DNA of 64,000 nucleotides, taken from NCBI RefSeq assembly GCF_033153115.1, contig NW_026889752.1, positions 2,604,001 through 2,668,000 of the forward strand. Reading direction: 5' to 3'. This DNA comes from Saccostrea echinata (lineage: Eukaryota). Below the pieces are notes generated by a model. That model was not told where the DNA came from. It saw only the letters and a list, made by a program, of their open reading frames with translations, and ran no database searches. Shown here in pieces: positions 10,039 through 12,226 of the stretch (positions are counted from its first letter, which is position 1; every line of letters starts with the position of its first letter). A program made the position numbers and the translations under genes.

Positions 10039-11967
10039 ATGGCACGTCGTTTCGATCGAAACATCAAAAGAAGAAAACGATCTATTAGGGCAATGAAATA
10101 CAAAGCCCGCAAAAATAGAAAGTTCTACTCCAATGTTCTTTATGCAAGAGAACATGTATTCAATCTGACCAAAAACAAGTTAACAGATAGTGAATACTTA
10201 TTATTAGCAAAAGGGCTGAAATTCATCCCAACACCTTCGACAAAAGTCGCAAAAAACGACTTACTCAAAGATTTTGATGAACTTGCACGTAAAATGAGAT
10301 GTAAGTTCAATTTCAAGACTAATAACGATGAGATTCATCCTTTCTACACAAAGAGTGGATATGAACCACCTAAGATGATTGGTGCACTTGAAACCTACAT
10401 CGATAAGACCAAACTTGAACTTTCCTCAATTCAGATAAAAAAATGCTCTGATAATTTATCTCAACTTGAGAGAAGAGCACTTAACCAGTTACGATATCGC
10501 CACGATATTGTAATTAAAAAGGCAGACAAAAACAACATATGTGTTGTTATGAACAAACACGATTATATTAAGGAGGGCGATCGCCAATTGAACACTAAAT
10601 ATTACGAAATAATTGACGATTTTGATTTATCATTGCTCCAAAGGAATATTGAAAATAAAATCAATGAACTTAAGGCAAATGGGTATCTAGATAAAGTTAC
10701 ATATAGATTTTTAATGGATATTACGTATCCACGAATAGGTAGATTATACTTACTACCTAAACTTCACAAATTAGATCAGACGATGTTTGATCTTATCAAA
10801 GAACAGGGCCACTACAATCAAGAAATCATTTGCCCGGCACGACCTATTATCTCGCAATGCGGGTCGGCGACGGAACGAATCAGCCAATATGTTGATTACT
10901 TCCTAATACCAATAGTCAAAACACAATCCACTTACATCAGAGATAGCTCTGATTTCATAATAAAAATAGAAAAACTTAGACCGCAAGCAGAATGCATAAT
11001 GGTCAGTTATGATGTAACATCCCTGTATACAAATATGCAGTTCAACGAATTACTCACAGCTGTCAGTGAAGCATACTCTAAATTCAACAAAGGAGAATTT
11101 AAAATTCCTTCGCCACCTACAGATGATCTTCTGTGGTTGTTACAAACAATATTAGAAAATAATGTCTTTGAATTTAATTCTAAGAAATATAAACAAATTA
11201 TAGGCTGCGCAATGGGCTCAAAATGCAGTCCTGAAGTGTGCGATATCAGAATGTATGAAGTCACTTCGGAAATTCTTAACAAATTTCCATTTCAACATAA
11301 TATTGTTTATCACGGTCGATATCGAGATGATGGATTTATAATCTATCATGGGGAAATGGATGAAATTCATCAATTTTTCCAAATAGCAAATTCACATCAT
11401 CCTCTTTTAAAATTCACATATGAAATTTCTGACAAAGAAATGAACTTCCTTGACATCACCCTATTTAAGGGAGAAAGGTTTGAATTAGAAGGAATTCTTG
11501 ATGTCAAAACTTTCATAAAACCTACTAATACTTTCCAGTATCTGGAACGCAATAGTGCACATAGCCCTTCTGTTTTCAAGGGAATTATTAAAGGCGAAAT
11601 CATTCGTCATTTACGCAATACTAGCGATTCTAATATTTTTCACAATGCGATCGAGAAGTTCAAATTTTCTCTGTTGAAAAGAGGATATAATGAAAATGAG
11701 ATTAACAGTTCAATGAACAATGTTCTAGAAAACTACAAAAGAGACCATTTAAATCAAAAAAAGAAAGTTAACAGTAATTCTGATATACCATTGGTCATGG
11801 TTACAAAATACAACCCAGCCATTAGCAATATCAAAAAGAAATTGCTAAAATACTGGCACACTCTATCAAGAGAGCCCGAACTCAAAGATATATTCAAAGA
11901 CAAACCAATTATTGCATATAAAAAACACAGGAGTTTAGGAGATCTCCTAACAAGTTCTAAACTTTAA
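10039..11967 (+). CDS. PLE reverse transcriptase, 642 aa, no endonuclease domain
   Basis: Same protein as copy A except DDLLW versus DDPLW. Arg/Lys-rich N-terminus. Confidence 0.95.
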   Translation: MARRFDRNIKRRKRSIRAMKYKARKNRKFYSNVLYAREHVFNLTKNKLTDSEYLLLAKGLKFIPTPSTKVAKNDLLKDFDELARKMRCKFNFKTNNDEIHPFYTKSGYEPPKMIGALETYIDKTKLELSSIQIKKCSDNLSQLERRALNQLRYRHDIVIKKADKNNICVVMNKHDYIKEGDRQLNTKYYEIIDDFDLSLLQRNIENKINELKANGYLDKVTYRFLMDITYPRIGRLYLLPKLHKLDQTMFDLIKEQGHYNQEIICPARPIISQCGSATERISQYVDYFLIPIVKTQSTYIRDSSDFIIKIEKLRPQAECIMVSYDVTSLYTNMQFNELLTAVSEAYSKFNKGEFKIPSPPTDDLLWLLQTILENNVFEFNSKKYKQIIGCAMGSKCSPEVCDIRMYEVTSEILNKFPFQHNIVYHGRYRDDGFIIYHGEMDEIHQFFQIANSHHPLLKFTYEISDKEMNFLDITLFKGERFELEGILDVKTFIKPTNTFQYLERNSAHSPSVFKGIIKGEIIRHLRNTSDSNIFHNAIEKFKFSLLKRGYNENEINSSMNNVLENYKRDHLNQKKKVNSNSDIPLVMVTKYNPAISNIKKKLLKYWHTLSREPELKDIFKDKPIIAYKKHRSLGDLLTSSKL

Positions 11968-12226
11968 TAAAAGTTAGTAAAGCCTCACTTGCTGGTCAAT
12001 TACAATGTAATCAACCATATCATTTACTGACATATCTCAGTCAGAGACAGTTAACAAATTATCGCTTTCTTGCATATTTATTTACACAAACAACTTTCAT
12101 CTGTGTTTATTATTTAAACATTACGTGACCTTGGGAAATTCCCTTACCGGTTCTACTATTTAAAAAGAACACACCGGTATATAATAAAACAAATAAAATG
12201 AATATACAATATTGATATATATAAGT

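What the first reader, a model, noticed from the sequence alone, without database searches (positions are those of the whole stretch)
10039..11971. Intact, very young PLE RT that stops where the GIY-YIG domain should begin
Seen: both ORFs are open for 642 aa and differ by one residue. They end at SLGDLLTSSKL with TAA TAA overlapping AATAAA. I see no Cys-knuckle or GIY-YIG motif in the remaining about 415 bp or at the N-terminus, and the catalytic motif is RYRDD. Known: in endonuclease-positive Neptune/Poseidon-type PLEs this linker is followed by the nuclease. Inference: a compact 2.37-kb lineage that lost its endonuclease but is still recently mobile at non-telomeric sites.
Basis: partly seen in the sequence, partly recalled or inferred. 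Interest (0 to 1): 0.78.

Follow-up and report, generated by a model that had tools for sequence, protein, structure and literature searches.

The report
Nuclease-less Penelope-like retroelement, truncated young copies
Two near-identical copies of a jumping gene that makes its own reverse transcriptase but no DNA-cutting enzyme; they belong to an old, still active oyster and mussel lineage that all lacks the cutter, so how it enters chromosomes is open.

Summary
Two 642-aa ORFs differ by one residue. They end ...SLGDLLTSSKL, TAA TAA, exactly where endonuclease-positive (EN+) Penelope-like elements (PLEs) of the same genome continue into a Cys linker and GIY-YIG. No nuclease is found in any frame.

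There is no compact 2.37-kb lineage. The family's full unit is 3,655 bp with two genes, a helical ORF1 and the RT. The window holds 5'-truncated copies that start 25 nt before the RT ATG, arranged as a head-to-head two-armed insertion. No near-identical EN+ master and no nuclease exon was found.

The missing nuclease is not a recent loss. 0 of 131 relatives that end at this point hit a PLE-nuclease profile. 26 of 31 such rows, the window included, form one clade (support 100/96) in a 71-row RT tree. ORF1 and a hammerhead ribozyme are kept across divergent families.

The family is young (12 of 19 full-length copies open, pN/pS 0.30) and dispersed far from contig ends. It never sits in (TA)n (0 of 24 flanks, against 11 of 12 for a co-resident EN+ family).

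How it gets a priming 3'-OH is inferred only; I favour pre-existing breaks. Other first-stage notes of this scan also flagged nuclease-less PLEs in this genome.

The parts
10039..11967 (+). RT ORF, 642 aa plus the first TAA (second TAA at 11968-11970). It has the PLE N-terminal motifs (GLKF, ADKN), the RT core (RYRDD) and a C-terminal segment ending SLGDLLTSSKL. No nuclease.
6925..8853 (-). Second RT ORF, 642 aa, one residue different (P for L).
10014..12383 (+). 5'-truncated copy (2,370 bp) of the 3,655-bp family unit. It starts 25 nt before the RT ATG and lacks ORF1.
9662..10013 (+). 352-nt piece identical to the element's 3' end (12032-12383). It acts as the upstream 'pseudo-LTR' of the plus arm.
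11968..12383 (+). 416-bp non-coding 3' region. All copies end ...TTTTTTACTAC.
12226..12337 (+). Hammerhead ribozyme motif. Helix I TGGATTC/GGATCTA; CUGAUGA box at 12233-12239 with one extra U; helix II GGCGG/CCGCC with a 61-nt loop; GAAA; helix III CACTAA/TTAGTG; cleavage after GUC at 12330. By my arithmetic on the repeat coordinates (period 2,370 and the arm mapping), the same motif lies at 9856-9967 (+), 6555-6666 (-) and 8925-9036 (-).
   Evidence: Rfam gave no match.
6509..8878 (-). Minus arm: the same 2,370-bp 5'-truncated copy.
8879..9587 (-). 709-nt 3'-anchored piece (last 293 nt of the RT ORF plus the 3' region), upstream of the minus-arm copy.
9588..9655 (-). 67-68-nt piece equal to the extreme 3' end of the element. 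About 6 nt of filler (9656-9661) follow before the plus arm.

Best explanation
SHOWN. The window holds one young, head-to-head (3' ends outward) insertion of a Penelope-like retroelement family. The full-length unit of that family is 3,655 bp. It consists of a 5' leader, ORF1 (232 aa from its ATG), a spacer, a 642-aa RT ORF and a 416-bp 3' region with a hammerhead ribozyme. ORF1 is modelled as all-helical with a disordered basic tail that ends in PY. Each arm in the window is a series of 3'-anchored, 5'-truncated copies. The longest (2,370 bp) begins 25 nt before the RT start codon, so it keeps an intact RT gene but lacks ORF1. The RT ORF ends at the end of the RT's own C-terminal segment. This is the point where C-terminal EN+ PLEs go on into a Cys linker and GIY-YIG. 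The element encodes no nuclease anywhere. This architecture (ORF1, RT that stops at ...KL, hammerhead) is shared by several families of the same genome with 45-59% RT identity. The RT that ends at this point is also found in bivalve proteins of about 645 aa (Saccostrea, Pinctada, Mytilus). These RTs form one strongly supported clade. The family is under purifying selection and dispersed at interstitial sites.

INFERRED. The RT, probably with ORF1, copies the element RNA from a fixed site near its 3' end. This follows the published internal initiation of PLE reverse transcription. The DNA 3'-OH it uses is not made by its own protein. My preferred reading (about 50%) is that it uses pre-existing breaks. 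Both ends of a double-strand break would prime, which gives the two-armed, 3'-ends-outward inserts with filler at the junction. A nick made in trans by a co-resident nuclease is the main alternative (about 20-25%). Because they lack ORF1, the window's own copies are probably not autonomous.
For: Anatomy:
- Repeat map.
- blastn of the window unit against 30 family loci.
- Junctions of the extra 1,285 bp in L007. Its ends are AT..CA, not GT..AG, so it is not an intron.
- ORFs of the 3,655-bp unit.

No nuclease:
- Pfam on the RT and on ORF1.
- Closed frames downstream of the stop.
- My nuclease profile finds only the controls among 1,228 six-frame pieces from the window, L007, nine downstream loci of divergent families and the two control loci.
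- The same profile hits 0 of 131 relatives that end at this point, 38 of 39 with a C-terminal nuclease and 16 of 16 with an internal one.
- Pfam GIY-YIG hits 0 of 63.
- The ORF1 model is helical only and has no PDB match at E<=0.001.

Clade:
- Careful tree of 71 rows by 516 columns. 26 of the 31 rows without EN, the window included, form one clade at 100/96.
- The quick 106-row tree puts 40 such rows on one side of a branch (SH-aLRT 94).
- 105 of 117 relatives with a complete C-terminus stop within 15 aa of the same point.

Conserved parts:
- By matching the coordinates, I find ORF1 relatives (21-41% identity) just upstream of the RT match at nine places of divergent families.
- A three-helix hammerhead is found in 8 of 10 downstream regions, and helix I changes on both sides between families.

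Activity:
- 12 of 19 full-length matches at 98-100% identity have no stop.
- pN/pS is 0.30 pooled over 15 distinct ORFs.

Targets:
- 0 of 24 flanks lie in (TA)n, against 11 of 12 for the EN+ family L041.
- The 3' region shares nothing with the sampled EN+ loci.
- By my own count from the place lists, about 10 of 20 loci are two-armed with 3' ends outward and none faces inward.

Literature:
- Internal initiation of PLE reverse transcription: PMC11167929, abstract.
- EN- families emerging within EN+ clades: PMC8557442, section 12.
Against: - No empty site or target-site duplication could be examined. A paralogue on C32 is not an empty site. The break-priming step therefore rests on anatomy alone, and EN+ PLEs also make inverted inserts.
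- Use of another element's nuclease is not excluded. The genome holds at least 1,175 GIY-YIG candidates, and I sampled the targets of only one EN+ family.
- Only 69 of 3,826 RT candidates and 40 of 169 3'-end candidates were scored. A rare EN+ relative could have been missed.
- Rfam found no hammerhead at E<=1. The window family's motif has an extra U next to the catalytic box, and the fold's energy is no better than shuffles (z -0.24).
- RNA evidence is thin. All runs were Logan contigs with shares of 0.18 or less.
- The tree is unrooted, so loss against ancestral absence is open.
- pN/pS rests on 13 or fewer synonymous differences per pair.
Confidence: 0.7

Rival explanations
1. Nuclease in trans: the family is non-autonomous for DNA cleavage and borrows the GIY-YIG nuclease of co-resident EN+ Penelope-like elements.
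For: EN+ PLEs are very abundant in the same genome: 150 matches over the Pfam cut-off were scored out of 1,175 candidates. Open 941-aa and 778-aa ORFs exist. The same tandem and inverted insert shapes are typical of EN+ PLEs (PMC3846280 passages; PMC8557442 abstract).
Against: - The targets differ. 0 of 24 flanks of this family lie in (TA)n, against 11 of 12 for the Neptune-like EN+ family L041.
- Its 3' region shares no sequence with 16 fetched GIY-YIG loci, 15 of them EN+ PLE loci; the only matches are to other nuclease-less families.
- Its own RT is under purifying selection.
- In rotifers no cross-mobilisation of EN-deficient by EN+ PLEs was seen (PMC3846280, Discussion passage).
- The targets of only one EN+ family were examined.
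Confidence: 0.22
2. Recent deletion derivative: a near-identical EN+ master exists, and these copies merely lost the nuclease.
For: A longer near-identical master does exist (3,655 bp), so the window copies are indeed derivatives.
Against: - The extra 1,285 bp lies upstream and encodes ORF1, not a nuclease.
- In 20 of 30 loci the RT-to-3'-end stretch is colinear with the window.
- Sixteen matches at 45-62% identity reach query residue 640 or beyond.
- Nine downstream regions of such families hold no nuclease.
- Relatives in other bivalves end at the same point.
Confidence: 0.03
3. Hidden nuclease: the nuclease is made by read-through, frameshift or splicing, or ORF1 or the RT N-terminus is an unrecognised nuclease.
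For: PLEs are known to keep introns (PMC4209133 passage). ORF1 has no known family.
Against: - Only 416 bp follow the stop. All frames there are closed, and the stretch holds the ribozyme.
- The nuclease profile finds nothing in six frames of the whole 3,655-bp unit.
- ORF1 is modelled as three long helices plus a disordered tail (pLDDT 71) with no PDB match at E<=0.001.
- The RT N-terminus aligns with that of EN+ PLEs.
- The four contig joints laid add no exon.
Confidence: 0.05

Closest known systems
Canonical C-terminal EN+ Penelope-like elements (Neptune, Penelope/Poseidon, Nematis), represented here by L041 and L043 of the same genome
   Same: - RT with the N-terminal GxKF motif and a DKG-like motif, and the same C-terminal segment (32% identity to L041 over 664 aligned columns).
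- Pseudo-LTRs from tandem 3'-anchored pieces, and inverted arms.
- A hammerhead motif in the 3' region.
- A fixed 3' end.
   Different: - No Cys linker and no GIY-YIG.
- A separate ORF1.
- No (TA)n targeting.
- 26 of the 31 nuclease-less rows form a clade of their own at 100/96.
EN- telomere-associated PLEs (Athena of rotifers; Coprina of fungi, protists and plants)
   Same: No nuclease. Figure 1 of Craig et al. draws an ORF1 and a coiled coil for some PLE types (legend passage); which types is not in what I read.
   Different: Per PMC3846280 and PMC8557442 (passages), those elements sit at chromosome ends, carry short reverse-complement telomeric repeats, and lack the pLTR/inverted organisation. 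Here copies lie megabases inside contigs, none of the 24 printed flanks shows a telomere-type repeat on reading, and the EN+-type organisation is present. Placement against their RTs could not be tested because no reference sequences were on hand.
EN- families that arise inside EN+ clades (Neptune-like MjPLE01 of kuruma shrimp; Chlamys PLE-X)
   Same: A nuclease-less RT related to EN+ PLE RTs. PMC8557442 sections 12 and 17 state that such losses occur, together with another way of using 3'-OH ends.
   Different: Those are reported as occasional families. Here it is a deep, diversified clade with a conserved ORF1 and hammerhead. Whether MjPLE01 belongs to it is untested. Koyama 2013 is not in the library, and I saw only its citation.
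Naiad/Chlamys (N-terminal EN+) and Hydra
   Same: The RT is C-terminal in the protein (Naiad). Elements are short and found in aquatic invertebrates (Hydra).
   Different: No N-terminal GIY-YIG. A canonical hammerhead is present, whereas Naiads lack it (PMC8557442 abstract). GLKF is present, whereas Hydra lacks GxKF, has DKT and carries a C-terminal EN (section 11).

Membership tests
Penelope-like elements (PLE) in general | RT of the PLE type with N-terminal conserved motifs (GxKF/Y, DKG) | tested here: met
   GLKF is present and ADKN stands in place of DKG. D163 is invariant in A2 and A3, and G59 and K164 are nearly invariant. The RT aligns end to end with EN+ PLE RTs and groups with them in trees. 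The motif names come from PMC8557442 section 11.
Penelope-like elements (PLE) in general | Pseudo-LTRs and tandem or inverted complex insertions | tested here: met
   There is also an array with period 3,655 on contig C33.
Penelope-like elements (PLE) in general | Hammerhead ribozyme motif in the terminal repeat | tested here: met
   My own script finds the box, GAAA and three helices in 8 of 10 downstream regions, and helix I differs on both sides between families. Against this: Rfam gave no match at E<=1, the motif has an extra U after the box, and cleavage was not assayed.
Canonical C-terminal EN+ PLE (Neptune, Penelope/Poseidon, Nematis) | C-terminal GIY-YIG endonuclease | tested here: not met
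Canonical C-terminal EN+ PLE (Neptune type) | CX2-5CxxC linker and preference for (TA)n targets | tested here: not met
   No cysteine in the last 67 aa. 0 of 24 flanks lie in (TA)n.
EN- telomeric PLE (Athena, Coprina) | Location at chromosome termini, with telomeric repeats at the element's end | tested here: not met
   Copies lie at 2.6 and 11.2 Mb of a 15.1-Mb contig, 6.6 Mb of a 38.9-Mb contig, 13.4 Mb of a 21.1-Mb contig and 2.9 Mb of an 11.0-Mb contig. Flanks are unique sequence.
EN- telomeric PLE (Athena, Coprina) | RT groups with Athena or Coprina RTs | not testable with these tools
Naiad/Chlamys | N-terminal GIY-YIG joined by a CxC domain; no canonical hammerhead | tested here: not met
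   No nuclease-profile hit anywhere in the protein or upstream in the unit. A hammerhead is present.
Hydra | C-terminal EN without CCHH; GxKF not conserved; DKT; RWK | tested here: not met
   GLKF is present, ADKN stands at the DKG position, and there is no EN.
Neptune-like EN- families (MjPLE01) | RT groups with MjPLE01 | not testable with these tools
Only one work in the library holds the name, counted twice as its journal and preprint copies.

The most novel reading that the evidence does not exclude
Animal genomes hold a major, old clade of Penelope-like elements that keeps the pLTR/hammerhead organisation of endonuclease-bearing PLEs, yet never encodes a nuclease and still spreads at interstitial sites. 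It would do so by letting both ends of chromosomal breaks prime reverse transcription, acting as a break-patching retroelement.

A bolder version: the RT that ends at ...KL is the ancestral state of canonical animal PLEs, and GIY-YIG was captured several times at different positions. In the relatives sampled here it is found after the C-terminal segment or inside it, before the last ~75 aa; the N-terminal position is known from the literature (Naiad/Chlamys).
Probability: 0.2. Interest if true: 0.8.

Novelty: new variant of a known kind. Interest (0 to 1): 0.55.

Why it matters
The literature divides PLEs into nuclease-bearing elements that insert inside chromosomes and nuclease-less ones confined to chromosome ends. 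Losses inside EN+ clades are mentioned only as occasional families (PMC8557442 and PMC3846280, passages).

This is a nuclease-less lineage that is diverse, conserved in architecture, under selection, recently active and interstitial, and it has the insert shapes of EN+ elements. That makes one question directly testable: can a PLE reverse transcriptase integrate without its own cut, and from what DNA ends?

The variable position of GIY-YIG relative to the RT's last segment among relatives also bears on how PLEs gained or lost their nuclease. For oyster genomics, it warns that pipelines which demand RT plus GIY-YIG will miss whole PLE families.

Tried and rejected
- Rfam, window 6000-13000, E<=1: no family matched. 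The MFE fold of the motif is no better than shuffles. The hammerhead rests on my own motif script.
- Splice origin of the 2,370-bp form: rejected. The missing 1,285 bp begins AT and ends CA.
- Empty site or TSD: the flanks of the window insertion match only a 68-70% paralogue on C32, which has about 1.65 kb between the two matches. There is no empty site. By eye the two flanks share no direct repeat of 3 nt or more at the junctions.
- RNA evidence: 10 runs, all with shares of 0.18 or less. Four runs were laid on one 3,655-nt unit, all as contigs. Four joints were listed:
  - Two are 'opposite strands', which means inverted arms.
  - Two are skips within the element (875 and 341 nt) in one metatranscriptome, one contig each, with 28 and 46 letters on the shorter side. 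None adds an exon.
  - A 31-nt stretch that holds the 3' half of the hammerhead recurs in other contigs with other flanks.
  - This neither shows nor excludes transcription.
A metagenome scan found no relative.
- Names and taxa for deep clade members: none of 10 clusters carries an organism name. Hosts beyond bivalves are therefore unknown.
- ORF1: no Pfam family at E<0.07. The Atlas gave no hit at 0.9 or more. BLASTP against the N-terminal extension of P0096 gave nothing. Foldseek against the PDB gave nothing at E<=0.001.
- Rooting the RT tree: not done. No TERT, Athena, Coprina or Naiad sequences were on hand.
- Literature: five searches found no paper in the held library that describes a nuclease-less, hammerhead-bearing interstitial PLE clade of bivalves. 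Supplementary file S1 and Fig. 8 of PMC8557442, and Repbase, which I could not see, may already list such families.
- Rows left out of the 71-row tree: 36 names were put on the drop list of the 106 rows (the script lists them). They are rows with long end branches, partial rows and near-redundant rows. One name did not match a row, so that internal-EN row stayed in, 35 rows were dropped and 71 rows were used.
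Full report
**1. What is in the window**

- Two ORFs of 642 aa lie head to head, at 6925..8853 (-) and 10039..11967 (+). They differ at one residue.
- In the first 22 kb only one other ORF reaches 110 aa.
- The repeat map shows two inverted arms, 6509-9230 and 9662-12383. They span 2,722 nt and are printed as 100% complementary. blastn gives 99.89%, which I work out as about 3 differences.
- Inside each arm there is a direct period of 2,370 nt.
- Read in element orientation, the plus arm is a 352-nt piece of the element's 3' end followed by a 2,370-nt copy.
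- The minus arm is a 67-68-nt 3' piece, a 709-nt 3' piece and the same 2,370-nt copy.
- About 6 nt of filler (9656-9661) separate the arms.
- The ORF ends ...SLGDLLTSSKL TAA TAA, with AATAAA overlapping the stops. From there 416 bp remain, closed in all three frames.

**2. No nuclease in the element**

- Pfam sees only a weak RVT_1 match and no GIY-YIG.
- I built a profile from the C-terminal tails of 36 nuclease-bearing relatives. I searched 1,228 six-frame pieces with it. The pieces came from window 6000-13000, the full family unit (L007), nine regions downstream of divergent family members, and the two control loci.
- Only the two positive controls hit: L041 at 2e-44 and L043 at 5e-24. Everything else scored E>=1.
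- L041 and L043 are EN+ PLEs of the same genome, with open frames of 941 and 778 aa.
- Aligned C-termini put the window's stop exactly where L041 reads ...NLKDMVVRTRL and continues with DNPLPNGGFKTCSDRRCLLC and the GIY-YIG. L043 does the same after ...KAKF.

**3. The '2.37-kb lineage' is a truncation**

- The window lies in a 923-Mb assembly, where the RT has many close copies.
- Of 70 listed matches (69 of 3,826 candidates scored), 19 cover residues 1-642 at 98-100% identity. Twelve of those have no stop.
- On contig C33 the copies form an array with a period of 3,655 nt.
- In the other family loci, wherever the preceding sequence is present, 1,285 bp precede the point that corresponds to window 10014. 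L007 shows the whole 1,285 bp. Among the 30 loci, only the two that are the window itself join the 352-nt 3' piece directly to that point.
- The 1,285 bp begin ATGTTACG and end ...GCTCA, so they are not an intron. They hold ORF1, 261 aa from a TTG or 232 aa from the first ATG.
- The full unit is therefore 3,655 bp with two genes. The window carries 5'-truncated copies that happen to keep the whole RT gene.
- In 20 of 30 loci the stretch from there to the 3' end is colinear with the window. In the 18 loci that align only that part it measures 2,368-2,374 nt. None of the sampled near-identical copies has room for a nuclease.

**4. ORF1 is not a nuclease and is conserved**

- ORF1 has no Pfam family (best E 0.07), no Atlas lead at 0.9 or more and no similarity to the N-terminal extension of P0096.
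- By matching the coordinates, I find relatives at 21-41% identity just upstream of the RT match at nine places of divergent families: C5:4.12 Mb, C12:4.39 Mb, C14:16.26 Mb, C51:4.35 Mb, C47:5.73 Mb, C36:9.18 Mb, C40:4.36 Mb, C5:13.18 Mb and C16:26.37 Mb.
- An alignment of seven such proteins (A1) keeps a central block (R74, A78, E82, P94, C103, L107...) and an end in ..PY.
- AlphaFold2 on A1 (mean pLDDT 71, pTM 0.62) gives three long helices (56-89, 110-161, 166-199) and a disordered basic tail.
- Foldseek finds nothing in the PDB at E<=0.001.
- By analogy with the ORF1 and coiled-coil elements drawn for some PLE types (Fig. 1 legend of PMC8557442), I take ORF1 for an RNA-binding or assembly partner. 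That is inference.

**5. The nuclease-less end is a clade character**

- *Same genome.* Sixteen matches at 45-62% identity also reach query residue 640-642.
- *Other species, first search.* It lists 120 of 271 relatives.
  - The named ones are Saccostrea echinata, S. cucullata, Pinctada imbricata and Mytilus edulis. Most are 640-650 aa.
  - None of the 120 carries PF01541 in the precomputed column.
  - Longer relatives (835-947 aa) have an N-terminal extension and still end ...SLKDILVRAKL.
- *Other species, exhaustive search*.
  - It gives 21,824 proteins at E<=0.001.
  - Hits down to about 36% identity end at this point.
  - From about 34% identity, proteins appear with roughly 150 further residues that end in the ...W I..L.T..P.GLN motif.
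- *Counts among the 186 sequences of 560 aa or more*.
  - 131 have fewer than 100 residues after the window's last residue.
  - 39 have 100-170 residues after it, which is a C-terminal nuclease.
  - 16 have more. In these the nuclease lies inside the ORF.
- *C-terminal ends.* Of 117 nuclease-less sequences with a complete C-terminus, 95 stop within 5 aa and 105 within 15 aa.
- *Nuclease profile.* It hits 0 of 131, 38 of 39 and 16 of 16 in the three groups. The 16 took no part in building the profile.
- *Pfam.* GIY-YIG hits 0 of 63 nuclease-less members and RVT_1 hits 52 of 63.

**6. Tree**

- A quick tree of 106 rows by 516 RT columns puts 40 nuclease-less rows, the window among them, on one side of a branch (SH-aLRT 94). 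The other 66 rows are 38 with a C-terminal nuclease, 17 with an internal one and 11 scattered nuclease-less rows.
- A careful tree of 71 rows (35 rows dropped, see Tried and rejected) recovers a clade of 26 nuclease-less rows at 100/96.
- In that tree the nuclease-less clade sits next to one group with a C-terminal nuclease. A branch at 99/95 separates that pair from the other two groups.
- A second, small nuclease-less clade (4 rows, 100/99) and one single row lie inside an EN+ group.
- The tree is unrooted. With the midpoint root the large clade would be an old single loss. Only a root on its own stem would make absence ancestral.
- This fits the published statement that EN- families emerge within EN+ clades (PMC8557442, section 12 read in full; section 17 passage). 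It extends that statement from single families to a deep clade.

**7. Ribozyme**

- By eye and by script, the 3' region holds a type-I hammerhead.
  - Helix I is TGGATTC/GGATCTA.
  - CUGAUGA is followed by one extra U.
  - Helix II is GGCGG/CCGCC with a 61-nt loop.
  - GAAA comes next.
  - Helix III is CACTAA/TTAGTG.
  - The cut falls after GUC.
- The script finds all three helices in 8 of 10 downstream regions.
- Helix I changes on both sides between families: GACTC/GAGTC, GGATCC/GGGTCC and GACCC/GGGTC. The long loop moves from helix II to helix III in one family.
- In the two regions where the script fails (L051, L052), the box and GAAAC are visible.
- Against this stand three facts. Rfam finds nothing. 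The MFE is ordinary. No cleavage was tested.

**8. Age, selection, places**

- Among 15 distinct gap-free ORFs, pooled pN/pS is 0.30. The window ORF against 12 others with any synonymous change gives 0-0.25. Counts are small, and codons with stops were skipped.
- All 3' ends stop at ...TTTTTTACTAC.
- Of 24 distinct flanks kept by my filter, one is really the next array unit with a changed base. None lies in (TA)n. Eight begin ATG, which are the first three letters of the unit; seven do if that row is set aside.
- The EN+ family L041 abuts (TA)n in 11 of 12 loci.
- The 416-bp 3' region shares only 20-28 nt of the hammerhead with other nuclease-less families and nothing with the 16 fetched GIY-YIG loci, 15 of them EN+ PLE loci.
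- Its last 152 nt give 169 candidates. The 40 that were scored are 99-100% identical and all lie in this family.
- From the place lists I count about 10 of 20 loci as two-armed with 3' ends outward, and none facing inward. This is a manual count.
- Copies lie megabases from contig ends.

**9. Mechanism**

- Shown: the element encodes an RT and ORF1 but no nuclease. It is selected, young and interstitial, and its targets differ from those of a co-resident EN+ family.
- Inferred: the RT starts at a fixed internal RNA site, as published for an anole PLE (PMC11167929, abstract only). The primer is a 3'-OH that the element does not make.
- I favour pre-existing breaks (about 50%). Two-armed inserts with outward 3' ends, stacked 3'-anchored pieces and filler are what two break ends priming in turn would leave. 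PMC3846280 (Background passage) says EN-deficient PLEs can prime at double-strand breaks.
- Use of a foreign nuclease remains possible (about 20-25%).

**10. Known or new**

- It is a PLE by RT, repeats and ribozyme.
- It fails the defining feature of the EN+ clades, which is the nuclease. It also fails that of Athena/Coprina, which is a telomeric location.
- PMC3846280 (Conclusions passage) states that the direct/inverted repeat organisation is conserved among animals with EN-containing PLEs and is not shared by the EN-deficient PLEs of protists and fungi. Here it is present without a nuclease.
- Five literature searches found no description of such a clade. Repbase and the closed supplements of PMC8557442 may hold such families, and MjPLE01 could belong to the clade.
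- I therefore rate it a new variant of a known kind, of moderate interest. The window's own copies are ordinary truncated members.
- Other first-stage notes of this scan on the same genome (s1-812220, s1-803624, s1-810016) point the same way. They are unchecked notes, not independent support.

Noticed in passing
database proteins P0173, P0175, P0182, P0187, P0188, P0200, P0202, P0203, P0213, P0216, P0230, P0231, P0236, P0241, P0246, P0253: A third PLE architecture. The Cys linker and GIY-YIG sit inside the ORF, before the last ~75 aa of the RT's C-terminal segment. In P0173, Pfam GIY-YIG covers residues 579-663 of 740, and residues 661-736 align to window RT 563-642. In the careful tree these proteins share one 100/100 clade with four proteins that have a C-terminal nuclease, so the nuclease's position has shifted within a clade.
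   Followed up: partly
L032-L046 (own genome, e.g. G000:C9:45659300-45664600): An abundant Neptune-like EN+ PLE family (941-aa open frame with an N-terminal extension, CX..CxxC linker and GIY-YIG). Its 3' end abuts a (TA)n microsatellite in 11 of 12 loci.
   Followed up: partly
window 12331-12383 and the 3' junctions in L001-L030: All copies end at ...TTTTTTACTAC. 7 of 23 genomic flanks begin ATG, the first three letters of the full unit. This looks as if the template sometimes ran a few bases into a following tandem unit.
   Followed up: partly
window 12233-12240; L048 and L049: The hammerheads of the window family and of one family with 53% RT identity carry one extra nucleotide between the CUGANGA box and helix II. 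Three other families do not.
   Followed up: partly
C-terminal tails of P0126, P0134, P0138, P0146, P0154, P0155, P0202, P0253: After the ...RAKL end, several relatives that are nuclease-less or have an internal nuclease carry a short acidic tail with a leucine pattern (such as LDILISLLDEQ). It might be a protein-binding peptide. The window's protein lacks it.
   Followed up: no
L031 (G000:C9:10469672-10472911): The best GIY-YIG match of the genome (E 4.8e-14) lies in a 299-aa open frame. By eye it looks like a cellular SLX1-type structure-specific nuclease with a C-terminal zinc-finger-like end, not a transposon.
   Followed up: no
L042, strand opposite to the PLE (ORF of 355 aa): An ORF whose end reads like a tyrosine recombinase (..HSFRIGAAT..LGRW..), which suggests a Crypton/DIRS-type element nested with the PLE. 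Seen by eye only.
   Followed up: no
P0213 residues 1-215: The N-terminal part of this internal-nuclease PLE protein has an LVLGDSN block, reminiscent of GDSL/SGNH hydrolases. Seen by eye only, and Pfam did not report it at E<=0.01.
   Followed up: no
window 5809-6508 and 12384-13083: Both flanks of the insertion have a 68-70% paralogue on contig C32 (about 4.6287-4.6316 Mb), so the element sits in a duplicated region. The right flank also holds a dispersed repeat (about 72% identity, 8 or more places) and long poly-T/poly-A runs.
   Followed up: partly
whole genome G000: The genome is probably Saccostrea echinata. Contig C5 has 18,600,107 bases, the same figure as the longest contig of the NCBI protein P0007 (S. 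echinata LOC133179540). P0007 has the same 58% identity to the query as the match at C5:4119608-4121533.
   Followed up: partly
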